DNA of 64,000 bases, from positions 15,190,001-15,254,000 of the forward strand of contig NC_043012.1 in assembly GCF_006345805.1 (NCBI RefSeq). The letters are read 5' to 3'. Below, piece by piece: positions 4,004 through 63,271 of the stretch (position 1 is its first letter; each line of letters begins with the position of its first letter). The notes under the pieces were generated by a model, which saw only the letters and a list, made by a program, of their open reading frames with translations, searched no databases and was not told the DNA's origin. The position numbers and the translations under genes were made by a program. This DNA is from Octopus sinensis. Lineage: Eukaryota.

Positions 4004-4312
4004 TGTAGCAATATCGTCTCTCAGTGCTATCTTCACTGTTTGAGAAGAGTATATAGAATGACCTCGGTCGAGATTACAAACAGCTTTGGCTGGTTCAACA
4101 TTGATGTAAACACTAATTCGATTGGCTGACACGTTGGTCTCTACTACGCTCGTACCGCTGGTTATAACTTGGTGCAAAATGTCTCGACTTATTTTCGCGC
4201 CATAGTCCAAGCAGCCAATCACAGCTTTCCATTTCTGAAGTTCACTGGGAGCCTGGTGAAGCTTATAAAACAAGGTTTCTCAGAAAAATATTCGTCTTAG
4301 GTTTCCAGTCCT
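4004..4312 (+). mobile_element. Solo LTR-like repeat copy A, 5' part (interrupted by Tx1 LINE)
   Basis: Begins TGTAGC. Homologous to 25532-25989. CCAAT-like boxes and TATAAAA (4264-4270). Continues at 9454-9608 ending TGTTACA. Joined length ~447 bp versus ~458 bp for copy B. No clean TSD. Confidence 0.55.
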
Positions 4313-4483
4313 GCTGACGAGAATATTTTATCCCGCCTGGTCGGCACCTATATAAAGTTGTCACTGTTGTTACTAAAAACAAAAACAAAAAGGAAAAAGA
4401 AAAAAAAGTAAGTTGGTTTTTTTCGTTAGTCAAATTTATTTTGACCAATTTCAGTGAAGACGCTGAGGAGGGGTAGGCCAATA

Positions 4484-5808
4484 ATGGCCAGCCCGAAGGC
4501 GGACAGAGCGGAGGTCCAAACCCAGGTCCTTAGTCCAGAGATGTCCAACCTGGAAGGAATAATGGCTATACCCGACATTTTCTCGGACGAGGAGGAAAGT
4601 GGGAGAGTCAGAAAGAGTATAGATGTGCCAAGCATGGCAAGGAAGGTGCTAAACTTCGCCGAGGCAGCTAGTCCGAAGGAAAGAAGGATTAACCTACCAG
4701 GGTGGAAGAAGCGAAGAGATAGTGTCTCGAGACGGTTACAAGATTAACTAAACCAAGATGAAAGATAGATAGAATCTCTCGAGAGATAAGAAGAGAACGG
4801 TAATATTCAAAACATACCGTAACATAGAAAGGAAAATAGACTTTTCGTCGGAAAAGGAAGTGGAGGCGTGCCTACTACCCATCTGGGATAAAATCACATT
4901 TTTAACCAGGGGTAAGAGGTATGGAACTGTGGAAACTAGGTTCAAGACAGAAGAAGAAGCGAGGGAACATTCAATGAAGCCCCTAAAAACAGGCATAATA
5001 ACCCTTCTGCCTATCTATAGAGGAAGGCGTATTTCAAAAATTACGGTCGCCAACATACCGCCGGAGATCGAGCCCGAACTGATAGTGGCTGGGGTCACTG
5101 CAGGGCTGGAAGACCAAATGGAAGTGCGTGATGCCACGGTGGTAGAAGCCAAAAAGTGGCATGGACAGAAAGTACAAATTATTGTACAGGCAGAACAGGT
5201 CGCCTTGGAAGAGATAGGCGAGGTCATCGAAATAGGAGAGAGCCGGATGGCAGTAATGGTGGAGGGCCGGAAGCCCAGGTGTTTCACCTGTGGCAAGAAG
5301 GGCCACATCAAAAAGGACTGTAAGCCGGCGGAGAAGGAAAAGAGTAACCACAAAACCAAGTGCTCAAGGCGGCTACAGAAACGACAGCCGCAACAGAAGT
5401 AGGGGAGGGGTGGTCACAGTTTGCTGCGACAAAACGAAAGCACACAACCCCTCCCCGGAGAAAATTATAAGCAAAGAGAAGAGAGAAGTAAAGAAGGCGA
5501 AGAAGCCGGAGAGGGAGAACAGGGTGTATGTGGCGATGAATACCGCAAACAGAGAAGTGGTACGCAGAGTGGAGACTCAACACGTCGAGGAGGTGGAGAT
5601 GGAAGTGAAAGGTGGAGGCTGGAGATGCTACGTGATGGGACTGAAAGGGTTCAACACGTATGCAAACGACTTTAGAAAAGACGTAGGCACACCCAGAATG
5701 AGCAAGGAGGATGCAGAAAGAAAGAACAACAACGCGCCGAGTCCACGTTCATCTGAGGCAGAAGAGACGGGTCCCCCCCGCCGGCCGGACCCAGAGGAAA
5801 TAAGGTAG
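4484..5808 (+). pseudogene. LINE ORF1 (gag-like, zinc knuckle), frameshifted as assembled
   Basis: Pieces MASPKADRAE..., DKKRTVIFKTY..., CFTCGKKGHIKKDC (CX2CX4HX4C, 5280-5321). Stop TAG 5806-5808. Several frame breaks and an apparent stop at 4745-4747. Confidence 0.75.
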
Positions 5809-5815
5809 GCAAACT

Positions 5816-8800
5816 ATGGCTGTTTACGTTGGTTGCATAAATGTGCGCGTCCTGGTAGCGAACTGGAAACAAGGTCGTTTACTAAACGATATCAGGGCGC
5901 GGATTTAAATGTAATTGTCGCTACTGAGACACGAATCGAAGGGCCAAGAGATCTACTCCCGCTCATGGAAGGCTACGAGAAATTTATTTCTCCTGGACGG
6001 CATGTGGGCGGGAGTGGGGTGTTGGTTCTGCTTAAAAAAGATAGTGTCGCAGAGAAAAAGTTGATTTTTTCTGATTCAGAAGGTAGGCTGGTCGTCTTAG
6101 ATCTGACGTTCAGTTGTGGTAAAGAAATCAGGCTGGTGGCGGTGTATGCACCTAATACGGGTCAGACTGATTTTTATCGAGGCTTGGAGAAGTTTCTTGG
6201 CACGTCAAAATCCATAGTCATGTTAGGGGACTTTAATGCCATAGTCGACGCGCGCGTCGATGGCATTGGCTCGAAAGATAGGAAACCAAACGCTGGCTTC
6301 CGGGATCTACTGAGTCGCTTTCAGCTGGTAGATCCCTACAGACTTGAATTCCCGAACGCTCCACAGTGGACGTGGTTAAGTGGCGACGGGTCTATCGGGT
6401 CTTACATAGACAGAATTTTTATTAGAAAAATAGATAAAGGATTAGTTAAGTGTCCACAGTTTCACACGGTCAGTTACAGCGATCACAGGATGGTCACTGG
6501 CGAACTGAACCTAGATAAGTTAGGTAGTAGGGGATCCGGCTACTGGAAACTCAATAAGTCCCTCCTGGCTATTGAGGAGTACAGAAAGCGGATCGAGTTA
6601 GTAGTGAAGAGGGCGTTAACCGGTTCCATTATTAACAACAAATGGTGGTACGCCCTCAAAAGAGCCATCAAATACGAGTCCGTTAGATACAGCATAGGTC
6701 TAACAACTAGCGGGCGTAAGAAAGAGATGGGGCTAGTTAAGGCCTTAGAGGAAGCCATCAGAGCTGGCGATGGGGCCCAGGTTAGGCTGAGGAGACTGGA
6801 GTTGAACCAGCACCTCGAAGCCCAACATATGGGTTGCATCGTCAGAGCTAGAATTCGCGCAATGGGGTGCGAGGGTATCAAGGCTGCCGGATGGGCACGA
6901 GTTGTGGAGGCTCAACGTGGAAACGATTCCACAATTAAGTCTGTGACGAACGGGCGAGGCGATGTGATCACCGAACCAGAGGAGATGTGTCGGACGTTTC
7001 AGGAGCACTTCGCTCGGCTCTTTGGGGGCGACGGCGGACCGGAGGAGAGGTGGACCTAACGGACATCCTCGCCGGGCTGCCGCGCCTCTCGGGGCAGGAT
7101 GCGGAGAGCTGTGAAGCGTCGATCTCGCCTGAGGAGATAGCCGAGGTCCTGGCCGACTGCGGTGAAGGCAGGGCGCCGGGGATCGATGGTTTACCTTACG
7201 AACTATATAAAAGAATGCCAGACTTGTTCGGGAACGTGCTGGCCGGCGTTTTCACGAACTGGCGGCAGAATGGGTTCATTCCCAGGTCTGTACGTCGGGG
7301 AGTGGTGACGCTGATCAGGAAGGACCCGAGCAAGGGGGACAACATAGACAACTTTCGGCCCATCACACTGTTAACACAGAGGTGAAGATTTTGGCCAAGG
7401 TGTTAGCGAAAAGGTTGACGCGTGTCGCGGGTGGTCTGATCGGGGAGGCACAAACTTGTGCGATCCCTGGAAGAACCATCCAGGACAATCTTCACCTAGT
7501 ACGCTACACAATAGAAAGGTTGGGAATGACTCTGGCAAGGTGGGGCATTGGTCCATTTAGACCAGAGTAAAGCGTTTGATAGGGTGAACCATCGGTACTT
7601 GGTGTCCGTGCTGGCGCAGTTCGGTCTGGGCATTGGCTTCCTCAGGTGGATCATACAGTTGTACGATAACATCGACTCGATCGTTCGGGTGAATGGCTTC
7701 CTGTCGAAGCCGTTCCGCATCAAACGGTCTGTTCGTCAAGGGTGTCCGCTCTCCCCGATTTTGTATGTGATGGCTCTCGAGCCATTGCTGCGAAAGCTGA
7801 GCGCCATCCCGATGAATCCAGGAGGTGGAGGATCTGTGACATCGTATGCGGACGACATCACCATCATCGTGACCGAGGTGGAACTCCTACGTAATGTGGG
7901 AGACGCCATCAAGGCTTACGAGACGGTGACAGGAGCAAAGATTAACCGGGAAAATCGGTCGGCTTGCAACTCGGCACCTGGAGGGGCAAGTCGATGCCTT
8001 CGAATAGCATCGTGGGATGCTGGACGGAGGGCCCGGTTAAGCTGCTAGGGATCTGGTTTGGTCCAGGTCTCCAGATAGAAAAGAACTGGTCTGAGGTGTC
8101 GGGCAAGGTGGCTCACGCGGTCGGGACTTGGTCCGGACGGTGGCTGTCCTTGAAAGGGAGGGCGGAGGTGGCCAATGTGTTTTTAGCATCGGTCATCACC
8201 TACCGCCTGACCGTCGTCCCTTGTCCGGATTCGTGGTTGAGCAAGTTGGAGAGGCAGATCTTCCGCTTTTTGTGGAAGGGAAGTGCTCCTCTTGTAAGAC
8301 GTTCTATCTGCTGTCAGAAACCGTTAAAGGGTGGCTTGGGGATGCCTTGGCTGATGATGCGCAGAGATGCGCTGAGGTTAAGGCACCTTTGGCTCTACCT
8401 GGATGGTGAACGGGTGTGGTCCCCGCTTGCGAAGCAGATGTTCCCCAGCTTTGTCAGTTTCGGTGGCAGAGAAACCTGGTTTCGTCGAAGACTTAGATCG
8501 AGCATGTGGTATTCGGAGTGCCATAAGGCACTCTGCCACTTCCGCAGGTCGGGCAATGCCGGCGGCTTTGGTACCACCGCAGCTTTCTATAGCAGGTTGG
8601 TAGAGGCCGGAAATGACGATGCCTTAGGAAGGACCTTGGGCCTCGATAGAAATCAGTTGGACAGCCTGTTCCGAAGGACGTTCGGGCCGAAGACATTGGA
8701 TAACTTCCAGAAGTCTTTGACCTGGCAATGTTTCAGAGGAGCTTTACCCGTTCGGGATAAACTCACAAGGCATGGTTGGAGTGGACCATCGAACTGCCCA

Positions 8801-9194
8801 AGATGCGAGCGGGATCTGGAAACAGTCTCGCACGCTATTGTTCAGTGTCCGAAGTTCGGACGTGTGGGTATATGCCGAACACCTGTTGTCGGACGGAAGA
8901 AGAGTACAGCTATCGGCTGAGACAATTATAAAAATTGACTCGCCTAGCTTTTTGACAAGTGAAGGTAAGCATTGCTTTCTCAGTACAGTAGCAGTAGCGA
9001 AAGAGTGTATATGGAAGACCAGAATGAAAGCGGTAACGACAGGCACCGTGATCTCTGGCTCCGCCTTGGTGACCTATTTCAGGTTCCACCTAAAAAGAAA
9101 GGTGGAGTTGGAGAAGAGGTGTCTGTCTGCGTGTGAGTTCGATAAAATATGGAAGCGTGTGGCACGGTTGCTGCGAGTGAGAGGAGCCACGTAA
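5816..9194 (+). pseudogene. LINE ORF2: APE endonuclease + reverse transcriptase + C-terminal zinc motif, six net frameshifts as assembled
   Basis: MAVYVGCINVR, ATETRI, LGDFNA, SYIDRIF, SDH (endonuclease). FRPITLL, LDQSKAFDRVNH, RQGCPLSP, YADD (RT). CPRCERDLETVSHAIVQC. Confidence 0.95.
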
Positions 9195-9453
9195 ACATGC
9201 TGTAGGTTGGCTGCCGAGTTTCGGTGGGAATAGCAGGGCTCGTGGGGTCGGCAATCCTGGTGTTCCCACTTCATGTGTTCCCTTTATGTTGTGTTGTTGT
9301 TGTGTATCATTCGATTTATCCGATTTTGTGAAATTTAAAAAAAAAAAAAAAAAAAAGTTCATTTTTTCTGTAAATACCATTTGTGTCTCATGACCCCAAA
9401 TCATGATGTATTGTCCCATTCTTCGTTGGCCCCTTGTGGGTAATAAAGAAATA

Positions 9454-9608
9454 CTTAGGTTTCCAGTCCTTCTCAGGGCGAACCTCTGACCACACAGAGC
9501 TCGTCTTAGGCTTTTAGTTCTTTTAAGAACTAAGTCTCTGACCACACAGAATACTCGACCAAGTTCCAGTTTCGAGGCAGGCGACCACCATTAATACAAG
9601 ATGTTACA
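9454..9608 (+). mobile_element. Solo LTR-like repeat copy A, 3' part
   Basis: Tandem motif GTCTTAGG..TTAG..C / CTCTGACCAC matches 25830-25940. Ends TGTTACA. Confidence 0.5.
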
Positions 9609-16600: not shown

Positions 16601-16975
16601 GAGCTGGCAGAAACGTTAGCGCGCCGGACGAAATGCTTAGCGGTATTTCGTCTGCAGTTACGTTCTGAGTTCAAATTCCGCCGAGGTCGACTTTGCCTTT
16701 CATCCTTTCGGGGTCGATAAATTAAGTACCAGTTACGCACTGGGGTCGATGTAATCGACTTAATACCTATGTCTGTCCTTGTTTGTCCCCTCTGTGTTTA
16801 GAGGTATTTCTTCTGCAGTTACGTTCTGAGTTCAAATTCCGCCGAGGTCGACTTTGCCTTTCATCCTTTCGGGGTCGATTAAATAAGTACCAGTTACGCA
16901 CTGGGGTCGATGTAATCAACTTTGTCTGTCTTTGTTTGTCCTCTCTTTGTTTAGCCCCTTGTGGGCAATAAAGAA

Positions 16976-16977
<2 letters not shown>
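16601..16977 (+). mobile_element. tRNA-derived SINE family S3 with internal ~161-bp tandem duplication
   Basis: Head GAGCTGGCAGAAACGTTAGC..GAGTTCAAATTCC. Central CTTTCATCCTTTCGGGGTCGATAAA..AAGTACCAG block. Tail GCCCCTTGTGGGCAATAAAGAAAT followed by (ATCT)n. Confidence 0.85.
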
Positions 16978-17008
<31 letters not shown>

Positions 17009-17159
17009 CTTATTGTCATTTTAGTTTTCTATAATAATCCAATTTGCCTTTACAAAAATATTTAGTCAACTTGGTATTTATCTGGTACTTCTTTTTTTAT
17101 TGACATTGAAATGATGAAAAGCAACATTGATCTCATCAGGATTTGAACTCAGATGTAAA

Positions 17160-20356: not shown

Positions 20357-23300
20357 ATAGACGAAATAGAAGGGGGTATAGCTACACATGGGGTAGAAGA
20401 TAACTGGACGCTTCTAAGGGACAACCTGCTGAAAGCCACTGACCAGATCTGTGGCTGGTGCAAAGTCCCTTCAAGACCCAAAATAACGTGGTGGTGGAAC
20501 AATATTGTTGACAGGCTATTAGACAAAAGAAACAGGCTAGGAAGGACTGGAAGAACAGTGGTAGCAGGGAAGTGTATCAGACTGCCAGAAGGGAAGCTAG
20601 GAGGCAGGTGTATTTAGCCAGAGGGGAAGCAGATAAGAAAAAATTTGCCAATGTTCTGCGCCGTGAGGATGAAAGACTTGAGGTATTTCGTATTGCAAGA
20701 CAGTGTGTGAGAGAGAATCGTGACGTGGTAGGAGAGAAATGTGTTCGCAAGGATGACGGCTCACTTGCACTAAATGAGGATGCAAAGAGAGAGGTTTGGA
20801 GACGCCACTTTGAAAGGTTGCTGAATGAGGAAAATGAATGGGATAAAGAGAGCCTGCCGAATGTCGACCCAACAGAGGGACCAGCAATCCGAGTTGACAG
20901 TTCCTTAGTAGTTAAGGCAATTACAAGCATGAAAACAGGGAAAGCCCCTGGCCCATCAGGAATTACTGCAGAGATGCTCAAAATATCTGGTAGTGTTGGC
21001 TATAGCCTAGTCACCCGTATAGTTAACCAGGTGATACACGAAGGAGTCATACCCAATGACTGGTGTAGCAGCATAATAGTCAACTGCTACAAAGGTAAAG
21101 GTGACGCTCTAGATACAAATAACTACAGGGGTATCAAGCTGCTGGATCAGGTAATGAAGGTCACGGAGAGGGTCATAGCCCAACTAATTAGAGAGAGAGT
21201 TAGCTTAGATGAGATGCAGTTTGGGTTCGTGCCAGGGAAAAGTACTACTGATGCTATATTCCTGGTAAGACAGCTGCAGGGGAAATACCTAGCCAAAGAC
21301 AAGCCCCTGTACCTGGCTTTTGTTGATATGGAGAAAGCCTTTGACAGGGTCCCCCGATCCCTTATCTGGTGGTCAATGAGGAAACTAGGGATAGATGAAT
21401 GGTTAGTGAGAGCTGTGCGAGCCATGTACAGAGACGCTGCTAGTAAGGTGAGGGTTGGCAACGAGTACAGTGAAGAATTCCAGGTAGAGGTTGGGGTCCA
21501 CCAAGGTTCAGTCCTCAGTCCCCTCTTATTTATCATAGTCCTCCAGGCAATAACGGAGGAATTCAAGACAGGATGCCCCTGGGAGCTCCTCTATGCTGAT
21601 GACCTTGCTCTAATTGCTGAGTCTCTATCAGAACTGGAGGAGAAGTTTCAGGTGTGGAAGCAAGGTTTAGAATCGAAGGGCCTTAGAATCAACCTTGCCA
21701 AAACCAAAGTCCTAATAAGTAGGAAGGTAGACCAATCACAAATGCCTTCAGGTAGATGGCCCTGCTTGATCTGTAAAAAAGGCGTAGGTAGAAACTCTAT
21801 AAGGTGCACCAAGTGTAAGCTATGGACACATAAGAGGTGTAGTAATATCAAAGGAAGACTAACTAGGAAAATAGTTTTTATCTGTGGCAGATGCTCAGGA
21901 GCAATAAACTCTGAAAATATGCAGAGACCAACTTCTACCACGTTCCAGGGAGAAAAACTAGAAGTAGTTGATAGCTTCCGCTACCTAGGTGACCAAGTCA
22001 GTAGCGGGGGTGGGTGTGCTGAAAGTGTAACTACTAGAGTAAGAATAGCCTGGGCAAAGTTTAGAGAGCTCTTACCCCTGCTGGTGACAAAAGGCCTCCC
22101 GCTCAGAGTAAAAGGCAGACTGTATGATGCATGTGTACGTACAGCCATGCTACATGGTAGTGAGACATGGGCTGTGACTGCTGAGGATTTGTGTAAGCTC
22201 GCAAGAAATGAAGCCAGTATGCTCCGATGGATGTGTAATGTCAGTGTTCATAATCGACAGAGTGTAAGTACCTTGAGAGAAAAATGGACCTAAGAAGCAT
22301 CAGTTGTGGTGTGCAAGAGAGACGTTTGCGCTGGTATGGTCATGTGACGAGAATGGCTGAAGATAGTTGTGTGAAAAGGTGCCACACCCTGGCGGTTGAG
22401 GGAACATGGACGAGGAAAACATGGACAGGAAAACATGGGACGAGGTGGTGAAGCACGGCCTTCGAACTTTAGGTCTCACCAAAGAAATGACTAGAGACCG
22501 AGACCTATGGAAGTATGCTGTGCATGAGAAGACCCAGCAAGACTAGTGAGAACATAACCTGTGGCCTACATACCTTTCCTTCTTGGGAAGCACGACCTTC
22601 GAACTTTAGGTCTCACCAAGGAAATGACTAGAGACCGAGACCTATGGAAGTATGCTGTGCGTGAGAAGACCCGGCAAGACTAGTGAGAACATAACCTGTG
22701 GCCTACATACCTTTCCTTCTTGGGACACAAAACTCCACTTGTGAAGACCCATTGAGACAAGTGAAAATCAAAATCAAATCAAAATCAAATCAAAATCAAA
22801 ATCAAACCAAATCAAATCAGATATCAGAAAGCAGAACCAAAATCGAAGTCGATCAACATCAATGGAAATTGCAGCTGTGGTTAAGCGAACCATCCGATCG
22901 TGGCCGTTGCCAGTGCCGCCCCGACTGGCCTCCGTGCCGGTGGCATGTAAAAGCACCATCCGTTCATGTCCGTTGCCAGCCTCGCCTGGCCCCCGTGCCA
23001 GTGGCATGTAGCACCATCCGTTCATGGCCGTTGGCAGCCTCACCTGGCCCCCGTGCTGGTGGCACGTAAAAGCACCATCTGTTCTTGGCCGTTTGCCAGC
23101 TCCGTCTGGCACCTGTGCGGGTGACACGTAAAAAGCACCCACTACACTCACAGAGTGGTTGGCGTTAGGAAGGGCATCCAGCCATAGAAACACTGCCAGA
23201 TCAGACTGGGCCTGATGCAGCCTTCTGGCTTCACAGACCCCAGTTGAACCGTCCAACCCATGCTAGCATGGAAAGCGGACGCTAAATGATGATGATGATG
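20357..23300 (+). mobile_element. 5'-truncated RTE-clade LINE
   Basis: RT ORF, 3' UTR with (AAATC)n and ~60-bp tandem units, and an (ATG)n tail. Confidence 0.95.
20572..22293 (+). pseudogene. RTE reverse transcriptase (573-codon open stretch, start missing) with embedded PHD-like finger
   Basis: GKAPGPSGI, NYRGIKLL, QFGFVPGKSTTDA, FVDMEKAFDRVP, GVHQGSVLSPLLF, LLYADDL, FRYLG, LHGSETW. Continues after a frameshift to RWYGHV. Confidence 0.95.
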
Positions 23301-23309
23301 ACATACACA

Positions 23310-23440
23310 TCAGTTGCAAATTTTGGCAAGGGCCAGCAATTTTAGGTGAAGTTAAATTGACTCCAGTATACAACTGGTACTTAATTTATTGGCCCTGAAG
23401 AGATGGAAGGCAAAGTCCCACTCAGCAGAATTTGAATTTC
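23310..23440 (-). mobile_element. SINE family S3, degenerate
   Basis: CTGGTACTTAATTTATT..GATGGAAGGCAAAGTC..GAATTTGAA matches the reverse complement of S3. Confidence 0.5.
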
Positions 23441-23654
23441 TTAAGTGAAGATGAGCCAAATGCCATTCAGTATTCTGTCTGGCATACAAAGGATTCTGCC
23501 AGCTTGCCGCCTTCACAGTGTTTATACATTAAGAATGGCACATGGCACCGTTATTATTTACCGAACTTCTAACCCACTATTAATATTGTCATTCTTTAAC
23601 AGGTTTAAAATAAGTAAAATGAATATAAATACTTCTCTCTGTGTGTGTTGCATT

Positions 23655-23930: not shown

Positions 23931-24160
23931 ATTTCTTTACTACCCACAAGGATCTAAACACAGAGGGGACAAGCAACGACAGACAAATGGATCAAGTTGA
24001 TTTTATCGACCCCAGTGCGTAACTGGTACTTATTTAATCGATCCCGAAAGGATGAAAGGCAAAGTCGACCTCGGCGGAATTTGAACTCAGAACGTAGCGG
24101 CAGATGAAATACGGCTAAGCATTTCGCCTGGCGTGCTAACGTTTCTGCCAGCTTGCCGCC
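23931..24160 (-). mobile_element. SINE family S3, full length
   Basis: Reverse complement of 16601-16977 without the duplication. Tail TCCTTGTGGGTAGTAAAGAAAT. Confidence 0.85.
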
Positions 24161-24574
24161 TTCATAGTATTGAATTCTGCCTATTCATCGTAGACAAGGA
24201 CAGTGTGATTGGTGTAGATAACACCAATGAAATTGGATATTGACCATTTGATTCATACATTACTGCTCATGTATTTATTTGTGATTAGGGGATGTAGTCT
24301 GTGGATTTGTTTTAGCAGTGTTGTGTTATATGAGTATTGCTGCTATGATTAATCAAATTTTTTTTTGTGGGGAATTCCTGTAGACTGTATATGTATTGCC
24401 TACTCAAGTTTTATTATATAGTTTTGGTCTGTAATGCATTAGACTTACTCTTCTATGTAAATGCATGGTAGGAGTGTCATACTAACACAACAGCTTTAGT
24501 AATCAAATTCATGTACAAAATACTAATCACATTAGTCATTAGTAGTTTATTTATGGGTTTATGTGTTTGTCTTT

Positions 24575-25531: not shown

Positions 25532-25989
25532 TGTAGCGTGAGTGATATCCTCACTGTTTGAGAGATATACAAGAAATGATCTCGTGTTAGATAACAATCA
25601 TCTTCGGCTATCTGACCCTGTTGTGACCACTGCTCTGATTGGTTGGTATTGGTGCAGTTTGTCTCTTGACTTATTTCACGCCAGTGTGTAAGCCAACCAA
25701 TCACGGCCTTCGGATAAGGTCCCATGACACTGTTTTTCTGATGCTTCATTTGAGCCATCTAAACCTTTTTAAAAGGTGAGATTGACAGACTATTATTTGT
25801 CTTTGGCTCTTGACCTTCTAAGGTATAGTCACTGACCACAGAGCACTCAACCATGTTCCAGCAACCCCAGTCTTAGGTTTTAGTCCTTTTCAGGACTAAC
25901 CTCTGACCTCAGAGCTACTCAGCCATGTTCCAGTTCTAGCGACAGATCACCAGCCAGCCAACCATGCTCCTGCTCCAGCCATGGCAACG
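25532..25989 (+). mobile_element. Solo LTR-like repeat copy B (uninterrupted homolog of copy A)
   Basis: Begins TGTAGC and ends GGCAACG (CA>CG?). Possible 4-bp TSD CTAA. Shares CTCACTGTTTGAGA, TTGGTGCA..GACTTATTT, CCAATCAC and the GTCTTAGGTTT.AGTCC motif with 4004-4312/9454-9608. Confidence 0.55.
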
Positions 25990-40439: not shown

Positions 40440-40670
40440 ACCTGTCATTGTCTCTGTGAGACTCAGATTCAAGGTCAGCAACTTTAGGGGATTGGTAAAT
40501 TGATTACATTGACTTCAGGGCTCAAACTGGTTCTTATTTTATTGACCCAGAAAAGATGAAAGGCAGTGTTGACCTTGGTGGAAATAGAACTCAAAAACAT
40601 AATGAATTGGAAGGAATACTGCAAAGCAGCATTTTTACCGATGTTCTAATGATTTTTTGCCAGCTTACTG
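40440..40670 (-). mobile_element. SINE family S3, degenerate
   Basis: TTGACCCAGAAAAGATGAAAGGCAGTGTTGACCTTGGTGGAA matches the reverse complement of the S3 core. Confidence 0.55.
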
Positions 40671-42899: not shown

Positions 42900-44200
42900 T
42901 AAATCAAGCTTCGTTTCACTTAGCAATGAGCCGAAAGACAGTCCGTATCAAAGCCTGTGGGACGCCGTCAGCGAAACTCCAATCCCACCAAACGGACAGG
43001 GGACCGTGATAAAGTATTGCAAAAAAAGGGAGAATTTCTAAAACACGAAATTTTTCTATGAAATGTGTGAAAACGTCAAGAGAAGTAATTCCCCACAAAA
43101 TGCGGAAGTGTTGACAAGTTTACGCGCGAGTATGGATGGATGTACGCGCGCCACACACACACACACGACGAAGGTTGGCAGATCGAACCTTTGAAGTCTC
43201 TCTCATCTTGTAAAAGTATAATAAATACGTATTCAATGAAAAGTATTGAGTAATTCTTCAGTTTGATATTATTAAGTTGTTTTTATTATAACACTACATA
43301 AACAAACAAGCATTAAGATAGATAGATATGTTTCTTTATTAGCCACACGGGGCTGCACACAGACGGGACAGATTACAAAGTAGAGTTTTTCTTTTTTGGG
43401 GAGAGAAAAAAAAAGTGGGGTAGGTTTTCGATCAAAAGGGATCGTAAAAGGGAAAGAAGAAAAAAAAAATGGAAAAGAAAAAAAAACGATCAATAGGGAT
43501 CGTGTATCACAGTGTCATGATGTAAAGTGTTAAGGGGGAAGCAGATAAGGTTTATCTGTGGGGAGAAAAGCTTACGGAAAAGACCACGGTAACCTCGGTC
43601 AATAATGTTACATGTTACCACATTTGTTTGCAAGTAGGTAATCCTCTGTTTTAAATTTTCCGGGTTCATAGGATTATGCTCAGATAGATAGATGATAGAT
43701 AGATGTCTTTTTTTAATTCAAATATGTATGTATGTATGTTTGAGGATACTTCAAAATGCGCAAGTCCGACGAAATCCGTTCGTCTGACGTCCTCGTATGA
43801 AAAGTGGTAGACAACCTATGCTCAGTAGTGTGATTTATCATATTCACCCAACGCATTCCGAAGTCTGAACCTCACAACGTCTTCGCTCTTCTCACGCTTT
43901 GGATGTTTTGAAATTCTCTGCAGTTTTAGTGTTTTTAACTATAAACGAATTATATGCAATTACAAATGTGAAAGAAAGGATCCAGATTGAACATTTTTTT
44001 TCGATATCTTTCGCTTTTTCGTCTTTTTTTTTTTTTAACATTTCGGATTTATTTTGCTAATTTAATAATGAATCATCTCTCACAACAAATCTCTTCTCTT
44101 CCATAATTCTTATTAACGTTACTTCTTTAAAAAGACAACCGAATAGGGAAGAAAGTTGTAGATTTTGGTGGCGAATCTAATTTAAGAGCCAGAACTACAA
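42900..44200. promoter_or_regulatory. CpG-retaining, promoter-like region upstream of the candidate exon
   Basis: Visibly more CG dinucleotides than the flanks. ETS-like GCGGAAGTG (~43104) and CRE-like TGACGTC (~43785). Confidence 0.3.
43318..43600 (-). mobile_element. LINE-type 3' UTR fragment with the shared tail motif
   Basis: Minus strand ends CAGCCCCGTGTGGCTAATAAAGAAACAT followed by (ATCT)n. Confidence 0.55.
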
Positions 44201-55424: not shown

Positions 55425-55685
55425 ATAATAATAATTAATTCGTTTATTGGCCACAAGGGCTGACAAAAATTAATTAAAACATAAAGGAACAAAACACAGG
55501 ACGAAAGTTACAAAGGGTTTTGTCCGTTTGCAAAAGTCCGTGTAAAAATTCCAGAGATAACAACGAAAATATAACAATTGAAATTCCCAATAGGGGGAGG
55601 CGCTTCGAAAGGTTACTCGTGGAAAAACCCATAAAAGCTACGGGAGCCTGGTCAAAAGTGGGGTAGAGAGCCCCTTTCTCCTTTT
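55425..55685 (-). mobile_element. LINE-type 3' UTR fragment with the shared tail motif
   Basis: Minus strand ..TGTTCCTTTATGTT..CAGCCCTTGTGGCCAATAAACGAATT followed by (ATT)n, resembling the Tx1 3' UTR. Confidence 0.55.
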
Positions 55686-62854: not shown

Positions 62855-63019
62855 TATTATTCAGCTTCATGTTCTGAGTTCAAATTCTACTGAGGTCATC
62901 TTCACCTTTCATCCTTTTGGGGTCGATGAATCAAGTGCTGTTGAGCACTAGGGGTTGATTTAATTGACTTGGTCCCTCCTCCGAAATTGTTAGCCTTGTG
63001 TCAAAATTTGAAACCATTT

Positions 63020-63056
<37 letters not shown>

Positions 63057-63250
63057 GGCAGTGAGCTGGCAGAATCAGTAGCACGCTGGACGAAATGCTT
63101 AGCAGTATTTCACCTGTCTCTTTACATTCTACATTTTAAAAACCACTTTCAGGGTTGATAAATTAAGTACCATTTGAGCACTGGAGTTGATGTAATCAAC
63201 TTGCCCCTTCCCCCAAAATTTCAGGCCTTGTGCCTATAGTAGAAAGGATT
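62855..63250 (+). mobile_element. Two S3-related SINE copies (~62855-63020, ~63055-63250)
   Basis: GTTCTGAGTTCAAATTC..CTTTCATCCTTTTGGGGTCGAT and GAGCTGGCAGAATCAGTAGCACGCTGGACGAAATGCTTAGC. Confidence 0.7.
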
Positions 63251-63271
63251 ATCGTTGTTATTATTGTTATT

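What the first reader, a model, noticed from the sequence alone, without database searches (positions are those of the whole stretch)
9429..9453. 24-nt 3' tail shared between the Tx1/L1-group LINE and SINE family S3: candidate LINE-SINE partnership
Seen: GCCCCTTGTGGGTAATAAAGAAAT (9429-9452) matches the SINE end 16954-16977 at 23/24 positions. Variants end the SINE at 23931 (-) and two otherwise different LINE-like 3' UTRs at ~43330-43355 (-, 21/24) and ~55440-55462 (-). Established: shared 3' tails mark stringent LINE-SINE pairs (typical of L2, CR1 and RTE), while mammalian L1 recognises poly(A) only. Inference: a Tx1-group RT with a short sequence-specific recognition signal mobilises an abundant SINE, which is uncommon for the L1 group.
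Basis: partly seen in the sequence, partly recalled or inferred. Interest (0 to 1): 0.7.

Follow-up and report, generated by a model that had tools for sequence, protein, structure and literature searches.

The report
Octopus LINE and SINE share tail
A roughly 45-base end piece is shared by an L1-like jumping gene and several short parasitic repeats in octopus genomes, which points to that jumping gene as the engine copying the repeats; the principle is well known, but this pairing appears to be unreported.

Summary
The 24-mer occurs five times in the window and nowhere by chance. It is the core of a ~42-45 nt 3'-terminal module.

At 9429-9453 it is the true end of a 5.1-kb LINE (4313-9453). 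A perfect 17-bp target-site duplication starts one base after it.

Related ORF2 genes (52-66% aa identity) from Octopus sinensis, Argonauta hians and unidentified contigs carry three unrelated 3'UTR types. Wherever the contig reaches the element's end, the UTR ends in this module. The orphan elements at 43330 and 55440 are UTR types C and B of that lineage, so the tail belongs to the LINE lineage and is not a captured SINE scrap.

The S3 SINE shares only this module with the LINE (76-81% over 42 nt). In Argonauta at least three non-autonomous families carry it, one built from the whole LINE 3'UTR.

No copy has a poly(A) tail. Copies end in (CTAT)n or (ATT)n, and a two-part hairpin is plausible but weakly supported.

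The LINE belongs to the L1 group. The Tx1 label is inferred, not tested, and trans-mobilisation is inferred by analogy.

Verdict: a stringent-type LINE-SINE pair, a new member of a known kind.

The parts
4296..4312 (+). Left copy of the 17-bp target-site duplication CTTAGGTTTCCAGTCCT
   Evidence: Identical 17-mer at 9454-9470. It is bounded exactly by the LINE's first and last bases. The duplicated site lies in a repeat unit that is continuous in a paralogue at 25869-25916.
4313..9453 (+). Full-length but decayed L1-group (Tx1-like) LINE, 5141 bp
   Evidence: Bounded by the TSD. Contains ORF1 and ORF2 domains.
4860..5402 (+). ORF1 remnant with one CCHC zinc knuckle
   Evidence: Pfam zf-CCHC, E = 1.2e-5. 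PDB hits cover only the knuckle and no RRM was detected.
5833..9194 (+). ORF2 (APE endonuclease, reverse transcriptase, zf-RVT), broken by at least five frameshifts or stops
   Evidence: Pfam Exo_endo_phos, RVT_1 and zf-RVT on separate frames. Three-frame translation and tblastn with homologues show the frame changes. The stop codon is at 9192-9194.
9195..9453 (+). 3'UTR, type A, including an internal A-run at 9337-9356
   Evidence: Colinear with the 3'UTRs of the L001 and L055 copies on both sides of the A-run. The A-run is therefore internal and not a poly(A) tail.
9407..9453 (+).
   Evidence: Predicted two-part hairpin.
9454..9470 (+). Right copy of the 17-bp target-site duplication
16602..16977 (+). 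S3 SINE, two overlapping partial units (16602-16802 and 16795-16977); tail at 16933-16977
   Evidence: blastn against the 23931 copy: 90.5% and 86.9%. Sequence.
16978..17009 (+). (CTAT)n run directly continuing the SINE tail
   Evidence: In Argonauta most tails end ...GAAATCTAT. An ATCT-type repeat also lies at the SINE's 5' flank.
23931..24162 (-). S3 SINE, complete 232-bp copy ending in the tail
   Evidence: No TSD of 8 bp or more was found.
43330..43680 (-). ORF-less element matching the type C 3'UTR of the same LINE lineage; ends in the tail and is flanked by (ATCT)n on both sides
   Evidence: No ORF. The body matches the 3'UTR that follows ORF2 homologue P0008 in L060 (local score 40-45 against a shuffle maximum of 22). 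Flanks.
55439..55685 (-). ORF-less element matching the type B 3'UTR of the same LINE lineage; ends in the tail plus (ATT)n
   Evidence: No ORF. The body matches the 3'UTRs that follow ORF2 homologues in L053, L054 and L061 and the Argonauta UTR-derived SINE. L061 ends GGGCCCTTGTGGCCAATAAAAGAAATC + (ATT)n.

Best explanation
The 24-mer is the core of a ~42-45 nt 3'-terminal module of an octopod LINE lineage of the L1 group (probably Tx1-like). The consensus is ..TGTCCCYTCTNTGTTTRGSCCCTTGTGGSYAATAAAGAAAT, followed by a short tandem repeat, (CTAT)n or (ATT)n.

Shown here:
- The module is the last sequence of the retrotransposed unit.
- It is the only part of the 3'UTR kept among at least three subfamilies of the lineage.
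- It has been acquired by several non-autonomous elements, including the S3 SINE.
- None of the copies carries a poly(A) tail.

Inferred, by analogy with experimentally studied stringent LINEs (eel UnaL2, zebrafish ZfL2):
- The LINE's ORF2 protein recognises this RNA module, probably as a small GC-rich hairpin on a U-rich/A-rich lower stem.
- It starts target-primed reverse transcription on the terminal repeat.
- SINE transcripts carrying the same module are copied in trans.
For: - TSD: a perfect 17-bp TSD begins one base after the tail, so the tail is the element's end.
- O. sinensis: a ~77%-identical copy ends in the same module.
- Three UTR types: ORF2 homologues of 52-66% aa identity carry unrelated 3'UTRs of types A, B and C. 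Wherever the contig reaches the element's end, the UTR ends in the module; the tail in L054 and L055 is badly decayed.
- Conservation is confined to the tail: across UTR types the tail is 59% identical (shuffles 26%), while the 150 nt upstream are at shuffle level (51% vs 50%).
- S3 shares only the tail with the LINE: local score 23-28 with the tail and 9-12 without it.
- Tail state: the two S3 tails and the window LINE share the CCCC..GGG state of one stem pair, where L001 and the Argonauta copies have GCC..GGC.
- Argonauta: 14 tails in 22 kb, on S3-like SINEs, on a second head type, and on an element made of a short head plus the entire LINE 3'UTR.
- No poly(A) tail in any copy.
- Hairpin: it is the minimum-energy fold in 7 of 7 and about 13 of 21 copies. 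Summed energy is -165.9 against -124.4 +/- 10.5 for shuffles.
- L1 group: APE + RVT_1 + zf-RVT and an ORF1 CCHC knuckle. The alignment to human L1 ORF2p reaches residue 876 (the FLW..GGLG region), while the other RT in the window stops at 771.
Against: - No experiment or transcript data. Recognition by ORF2p and trans-mobilisation rest on analogy.
- Structural support is weak. RNAalifold predicted no consensus structure. Only one pair covaries, and shuffle controls reached the observed values in 16-37 of 500 runs. Single-sequence z-scores range from -3.2 to +1.0.
- The conserved AATAAA could instead reflect Pol II 3'-end processing.
- Tx1 clade membership was not tested.
- ARAGORN and Rfam do not recognise the S3 head as a tRNA.
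- Sampling is small: 64 kb plus about 65 kb of cephalopod loci. Copy ages, concurrent activity and genome-wide counts were not measured.
- Other S3-like SINE bodies in the window carry a different tail, so this LINE is not the only candidate engine for the SINE superfamily.
Confidence: 0.72

Rival explanations
1. The module is conserved for 3'-end formation or stability of the LINE transcript (AAUAAA signal plus hairpin), not as an RT recognition site. The SINEs inherited it as a passenger and are mobilised by some other rule or some other LINE.
For: A canonical AATAAA is nearly invariant inside the tail. Hairpin covariation is weak.
Against: No copy has a poly(A) tail, and no copy carries the 10-30 nt that would lie between AAUAAA and a cleavage site. 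Elements end 5-11 nt after the hexamer or run into (CTAT)n or (ATT)n. Independent non-autonomous families with different heads kept exactly this module, which is hard to explain for presumed Pol III transcripts if the module only served Pol II processing.
Confidence: 0.1
2. The tail belongs primarily to another LINE clade (CR1, L2 or RTE type) that mobilises the SINEs. The L1-like lineage acquired the tail by recombination, or the ORF2 studied here is itself not L1/Tx1.
For: A hairpin plus a terminal microsatellite without poly(A) is the classic CR1/L2/RTE style. RT-level PDB hits do not discriminate clades: the unrelated RT at 20572-22293 also hits L1 ORF2p best. The clade could not be named. 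Octopus genomes are rich in RTE, CR1 and Dong elements (PMC13282606, PMC8967140).
Against: All the independent ORF2-linked tails are on the APE + RVT_1 + zf-RVT lineage: window, L001, L055/L056, L054, L057 and L061 directly, and L060 through its match to the 43330 element. ORF1 has a CCHC knuckle (type I ORF1; PMC5203782). Homology to L1 ORF2p extends into the post-RT thumb region, unlike the control. The only other RT gene in the window has no tail.
Confidence: 0.1
3. The tail at 9429-9453 is a SINE (or other element) fragment that merely lies next to a LINE ending at the A-run 9337-9356.
For: A 20-nt A-run lies 72 nt upstream of the 24-mer.
Against: The TSD encloses the tail. The L001 and L055 copies are colinear across the A-run position and end in the same tail. 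The stretch between the A-run and the tail (9381-9428) is LINE UTR, not SINE.
Confidence: 0.02

Closest known systems
Stringent-type LINE/SINE pairs with a proven tail requirement: eel UnaL2/UnaSINE1 and zebrafish ZfL2 (L2 clade; Kajikawa and Okada 2002; PMC4176376)
   Same: A conserved 3'-terminal stem-loop followed by a short tandem repeat, no poly(A), the same tail on partner SINEs, and divergence of the rest of the 3'UTR.
   Different: Those are L2-clade elements with experimental proof. Here the LINE is L1-group, the tail sequence is unrelated, and nothing has been tested at the bench.
Maize and sorghum LINE1-1_ZM with ZmSINE2/ZmSINE3, and Chlamydomonas L1-1_CR with SINEX-3_CR (PMC3472496, PMC3747384)
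   Same: An L1-clade lineage in which the last ~45-50 nt are conserved against a diverged element, fold into a hairpin, and are shared with tRNA-type SINEs. This is the direct precedent for stringent recognition inside the L1 clade.
   Different: Those are plants and a green alga, with elements ending in (T)n or (A)n. Here it is an animal (octopod) lineage ending in (CTAT)n or (ATT)n. The 2013 catalogue of 58 pairs lists no animal L1/Tx1 pair and no mollusc.
Crocodilian Tx1-Mar LINEs and SINEU (PMC4494074)
   Same: A Tx1-group LINE proposed as the mobiliser of a SINE family.
   Different: That link rests on a shared insertion target and shared 5' heads, and all SINEU have poly(A) tails. Here the link is a shared sequence-specific 3' tail, without poly(A) and without one common target.
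Mammalian L1 with Alu/B1 (relaxed type)
   Same: The same broad LINE group by ORF2 architecture and thumb-region homology.
   Different: Mammalian L1 primes on poly(A) and shares no tail with its SINEs. The octopod elements have no poly(A) and do share a specific tail.
Bivalve HCD SINEs with several LINE partners (PMC11481361); CORE-SINEs such as octopus OR1 (PMC4824008)
   Same: One SINE body combined with different LINE-derived tails (mosaic evolution). The window shows S3-like bodies with two different tails. From memory, the S3 body resembles the CORE domain; this was not tested.
   Different: The paper names Nimb and CR1-Zenon tails among four partner clades and never mentions Tx1. I found no LINE partner for octopus SINEs in the held literature.

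Membership tests
Stringent-type LINE-SINE pair (shared 3' tail) | The SINE 3' end is homologous to the 3' end of the LINE and to nothing else in it | tested here: met
   23/24 core match; 76-81% over 42 nt against 26% for shuffles. Local score drops to background once the tail is removed.
Stringent-type LINE-SINE pair (shared 3' tail) | The tail is the very 3' terminus of the retrotransposed LINE | tested here: met
   A perfect 17-bp TSD starts one base after the tail.
Stringent-type LINE-SINE pair (shared 3' tail) | The tail is conserved among LINE subfamilies while the rest of the 3'UTR diverges | tested here: met
   Three UTR types (A, B, C) are linked to homologous ORF2s. Tail identity is 59%, while the upstream 150 nt are at shuffle level.
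Stringent-type LINE-SINE pair (shared 3' tail) | No poly(A) tail; the element ends in a short tandem repeat | tested here: met
   About 20 copies end in ..GAAAT, with (CTAT)n or (ATT)n continuing in several of them; none has poly(A).
Stringent-type LINE-SINE pair (shared 3' tail) | A conserved stem-loop in the tail, supported by compensatory changes | tested here: inconclusive
   The hairpin is the MFE in 7/7 and about 13/21 copies, with a group z of about -4. Only one covarying pair was found, shuffle controls were not clean, and RNAalifold gave no consensus structure.
Stringent-type LINE-SINE pair (shared 3' tail) | The tail is required for LINE retrotransposition and sufficient for trans-mobilisation of the SINE | not testable with these tools
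   Needs a retrotransposition assay.
Stringent-type LINE-SINE pair (shared 3' tail) | Concurrent amplification of LINE and SINE (age landscapes) | not tested
   Needs whole-genome copy sets. Only about 130 kb of cephalopod DNA was available.
L1 group of LINEs | N-terminal APE-type endonuclease followed by RT in ORF2 | tested here: met
   Pfam Exo_endo_phos (E = 1.2e-9) and RVT_1 (E = 4.4e-18) in that order. The EN plus linker aligns to L1 ORF2p residues 56-420.
L1 group of LINEs | Homology to L1 ORF2p beyond the RT palm (thumb region, FLW...GGLG motif) | tested here: met
   P0001 aligns to L1 ORF2p residues 627-876, including this region. The control RT in the window aligns only to 418-771.
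L1 group of LINEs | Type I ORF1 (RRM plus CCHC knuckle) | tested here: inconclusive
   The CCHC knuckle was found. No RRM was detected by Pfam or PDB search in this decayed copy.
Tx1 clade (sensu Repbase/RTclass1) | The RT domain groups with Tx1 references in a phylogeny | not testable with these tools
   No reference library was available, and no informative names came from three protein searches and two cluster look-ups. Indirect support: the clade lists in the mollusc and octopus papers I read name Tx1 or L1-Tx1 and no separate L1 clade (PMC10294476, PMC13282606).
Tx1 clade (sensu Repbase/RTclass1) | Target-sequence preference (common, but not universal, in Tx1) | tested here: inconclusive
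   Three of five window copies sit in microsatellites that match their own terminal repeat. The full-length LINE and the L001 copy do not.
Relaxed (poly(A)-dependent) L1 type | 3' poly(A) tail at the end of LINE and SINE copies | tested here: not met
   No copy has one. The A-run at 9337-9356 is internal to the UTR.
tRNA-derived SINE | A 5' head recognisable as a tRNA with A and B boxes | tested here: inconclusive
   ARAGORN and Rfam find no tRNA. By eye there is a B-box-like GAGTTCAAATTCC in the head.
tRNA-derived SINE | Short, non-coding, multi-copy, conserved across species, with a LINE-derived tail | tested here: met
   232-bp unit. Copies at 16602-16977 and 23931-24162, and homologous SINEs in Argonauta.

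The most novel reading that the evidence does not exclude
This L1/Tx1-like lineage is an animal L1-group LINE with stringent, sequence-specific 3'-end recognition, and it is a main engine of the very large SINE expansion in octopods. That would extend Ohshima's proposal, that stringency is the older mode inside the L1 clade, from plants to animals. It would also name a partner for SINE families that a 2026 O. vulgaris annotation still lists as 893 recently active 'unclassified' families.
Probability: 0.4. Interest if true: 0.6.

Novelty: new member of a known kind. Interest (0 to 1): 0.45.

Why it matters
SINEs make up about 11.6% of the Octopus vulgaris genome, and most families are unclassified with no named LINE partner (PMC13282606). 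Work on active octopus LINEs has focused on RTE and Dong elements (PMC9115989). A shared, conserved 3' tail gives a concrete and testable candidate for what drives part of that expansion. It also adds an animal example to the few L1-clade lineages that appear to need a specific 3' sequence rather than poly(A). In practice, the tail and the three UTR types would let annotators link tail-bearing SINE and orphan-UTR fragments to their LINE.

Tried and rejected
- Exact-pattern scans for the tail (CCTTGTGGNNAATAAAGAAA) gave 47 metagenome loci and 3 viral loci. None matched the SINE or LINE by blastn, so they are chance hits.
- Naming the clade failed. Three protein searches returned only 'hypothetical', 'uncharacterized' or unnamed entries. 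Two cluster look-ups of 20 proteins gave no informative name. The 1.84-billion-protein search gave many full-length relatives but carries no labels.
- 'Best PDB hit is L1 ORF2p' was rejected as clade evidence for the RT domain. The unrelated RT at 20572-22293 hits L1 ORF2p even better. Only the extent of the alignment into the thumb region is informative.
- Rfam and ARAGORN found no tRNA in the S3 head or in the Argonauta SINE heads.
- RNAalifold on the 20-sequence tail alignment predicted no structure.
- More distant relatives do not carry the tail: Acanthosepion L058, Tara contigs L059 and L062.
- No TSD was found for the 23931 SINE. TSDs of the microsatellite-embedded copies cannot be separated from the repeats themselves.
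- Albertin et al. 2015 (PMC4795812) is not held in the library.

Full report
**Observation.**
The 24-mer GCCCCTTGTGGGTAATAAAGAAAT is at 9429-9452 (+). With up to three mismatches it recurs at 16954-16977 (+, 1 mismatch), 23931-23954 (-, 3) and 43330-43353 (-, 3). One hundred dinucleotide-preserving shuffles gave no match. The site at 55439-55462 (-) matches 18/24 by my count, and a profile of the tail recovers it at E = 4.5e-7. That profile finds exactly five copies in the 64 kb.

**The element at 4313-9453.**
- The region carries an ORF1 remnant with a CCHC knuckle.
- ORF2 has an APE endonuclease, RVT_1 and zf-RVT, spread over frames with at least five frameshifts or stops. The stop codon is at 9192-9194.
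- A perfect 17-bp direct repeat, CTTAGGTTTCCAGTCCT, lies at 4296-4312 and 9454-9470, one base after the 24-mer.
- The duplicated site sits in a ~51-bp repeat unit. A paralogue at 25869-25916 reads through the corresponding position without interruption.
- So 4313-9453 is one retrotransposed unit of 5141 bp, and the tail is its 3' terminus.
- The 20-nt A-run at 9337-9356 is internal. The O. sinensis copy (L001) aligns on both sides of it (9297-9341 and 9381-9452) and ends ...TGTCCCCCTCTATGTTTGGGCCCTTGTGGCTAATAAAGAAAT. A Logan contig (L055) has the same UTR with a decayed tail.

**Source organism.**
The window is octopus DNA. The nearest named proteins come from Octopus sinensis, O. bimaculoides and Argonauta hians.

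**One LINE lineage, three 3'UTR types, one tail.**
ORF2 C-terminal homologues share 52-66% aa identity and all carry RVT_1 and/or zf-RVT. I fetched them with their downstream DNA.
- Type A UTR: window LINE, L001, L055.
- Type B UTR (contains CCCCCCTATTGGGGA...): L053, L054, L061 and Argonauta L057. L061 ends GGGCCCTTGTGGCCAATAAAAGAAATC followed by (ATT)n.
- Type C UTR: L060, linked to P0008; the contig stops before the element's end.

The orphan element at 55439-55685 (-) matches type B. The one at 43330-43680 (-) matches type C, with local scores of 28-45 against a shuffle maximum of 22.

Between types, the 3'UTR upstream of the tail is no more similar than shuffled sequence (51% vs 50% in global alignment). 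The ~42-nt tail is 59% identical, against 26% for shuffles.

**The non-autonomous partners.**
- S3 is a 232-bp unit. The complete copy is at 23931-24162 (-), and two overlapping partial units lie at 16602-16977.
- S3 shares only the tail with the LINE. Its tail is closest to types A and C (76-81%).
- The window LINE and both S3 copies share the CCCC...GGG state of the tail. L001 and the Argonauta copies have GCC...GGC.
- In 22 kb of Argonauta hians there are 14 tails. They sit on SINEs homologous to S3 (body ...GGGATCGATAAAACAAGTACCAGT...), on a second head type, and on an element at L057 12330-12652. That element is a short head followed by the entire LINE 3'UTR, starting at the stop codon.
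- Cuttlefish and Tara-metagenome relatives of the LINE lack the tail.

**Anatomy of the tail.**
- No copy has a poly(A) tail. Copies end ...AATAAAGAAAT, often continued by CTAT or (CTAT)n, or by (ATT)n in type B.
- Three of the five window copies are flanked on both sides by the same microsatellite. This fits priming by annealing of the target to the terminal repeat, but a TSD cannot be separated from the repeat itself.
- Folding gives a common two-part hairpin. The upper stem is 4 bp (GGCC/GGCU or GCCC/GGGY) closing a CUUGU loop. The lower stem pairs UCUNUGUU with AAUAAAGA.
- This hairpin is the minimum-energy structure in 7 of 7 representative copies and about 13 of 21 copies. Summed energy is -165.9 kcal/mol against -124.4 +/- 10.5 for shuffles.
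- Covariation is thin. In the upper stem 85% of cells pair. One pair switches G-C to C-G. Shuffle controls reached the observed values in 16-37 of 500 runs, and RNAalifold returned no consensus structure. The hairpin is plausible, not shown.

**Clade.**
- APE + RT + zf-RVT and a CCHC ORF1 fit the L1 group with type I ORF1 (PMC5203782).
- The best PDB hit being L1 ORF2p is not discriminating at the RT level. The second, unrelated RT gene in the window (20572-22293; RVT_1 plus a Cys-rich motif, with strong R2 hits) also matches L1 ORF2p best.
- What is informative is the extent of the alignment. The tail-bearing lineage aligns to L1 ORF2p through residue 876, including ...FLWKG...GGLGMP against ...FIWNQ...AGGITLP. 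The control stops at residue 771. The EN-plus-linker ORF aligns to L1 residues 56-420.
- Tx1 versus L1 in the strict sense could not be tested; no names or reference sets were obtainable.
- The clade lists in the mollusc and octopus papers I read name Tx1 or L1-Tx1 and no separate L1 clade. O. vulgaris has 13 recently active L1-Tx1 families with a mean insert of about 5.4 kb (PMC10294476, PMC13282606). The Tx1 label is therefore likely but inferred.
- The only other RT gene in the window has no tail.

**Mechanism.**
- Shown: a conserved 3'-terminal module, shared by descent between a LINE lineage and several non-autonomous families, with no poly(A).
- Inferred by analogy with UnaL2 and ZfL2 (PMC4176376) and with the maize L1 case (PMC3472496): ORF2p binds this module, starts reverse transcription on the terminal repeat, and copies SINE RNAs with the same module in trans.
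- Main rivals: the module serves transcript 3'-end formation (AAUAAA), or another LINE clade is the real owner of the tail. Both are less likely for the reasons given in the structured fields. The 'captured fragment' reading is refuted.

**What is known.**
- Shared tails are the textbook signature of stringent LINE/SINE pairs.
- Inside the L1 clade they are documented for maize, sorghum and Chlamydomonas. A 2013 catalogue of 58 pairs lists no animal L1/Tx1 pair and no mollusc.
- Tx1-Mar/SINEU in crocodilians is linked by target and 5' head, with poly(A) tails.
- The bivalve SINE paper names Nimb and CR1-Zenon tails among four partner clades and never mentions Tx1.
- I found no named LINE partner for octopus SINEs in the held literature. 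Repbase and Dfam entries could not be checked.
- I therefore rate this a new member of a known kind, of moderate interest mainly for cephalopod genome biology.

Noticed in passing
window 20572-22293 (+): A 573-aa ORF with RVT_1 (E = 5.9e-32) followed by a weak PHD-like Cys-rich motif. It has strong PDB hits to both L1 ORF2p and R2 proteins. This is a second, unrelated LINE (possibly Dong/R4-like) with no copy of the tail near its 3' side.
   Followed up: partly
window 62871-63020 (+), 63064-63260 (+), 40460-40660 (-), 23320-23513 (-): SINEs with an S3-like body but a different 3' tail (approximately GGCCTTGTGCC.A.A.T.GAAA). At least the two copies at 62871-63260 run into (ATT)n or ATT-like repeats. 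One SINE body therefore carries at least two tails, which implies module swapping and possibly a second LINE partner.
   Followed up: partly
window 9454-9571 and 25820-25940: The LINE inserted into a ~51-bp tandem-like repeat (units starting GTCTTAGG...CTCTGACCACACAGAG). A paralogous stretch lies 16 kb away. Similar low-complexity repeats flank LINE copies in L001. I did not establish whether this is a preferred target.
   Followed up: partly
L057 12330-12652 (Argonauta hians): A non-autonomous element made of a short head (containing GGTTCAATC, B-box-like) fused to the entire LINE 3'UTR from the stop codon to the tail. It lies directly downstream of a LINE copy.
   Followed up: partly
L058 12326-12900 (Acanthosepion pharaonis) and L059 2603-3040 (Tara marine metagenome): More distant relatives of the LINE (34% and 51% aa identity to the window ORF2). 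They share a different conserved 3' end (..TTTTATG.CCCTCCCC..ATG.ACAAT.T..GTAAATA..) and lack the octopod tail.
   Followed up: no
protein P0002: A protein labelled 'MAG: zinc-binding domain-containing protein [Herbaspirillum sp.]' is 52% identical to the window's LINE ORF2 over 98% of the query. It is probably animal-host contamination of a bacterial metagenome-assembled genome. Several JGI and ENA 'metagenome' contigs likewise carry this LINE.
   Followed up: no
window 16602-16977: The S3 copy here is two overlapping partial units: SINE positions 10-210, then 42-232. Only the second unit carries the tail. The whole sits between ATCT-type microsatellite flanks.
   Followed up: partly
window 5290-5808 (+): A 172-aa Lys/Arg-rich ORF overlaps the end of ORF1 in another frame and runs to just before ORF2. 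It has no Pfam hit and is probably a frameshifted continuation of ORF1 in this decayed copy.
   Followed up: no
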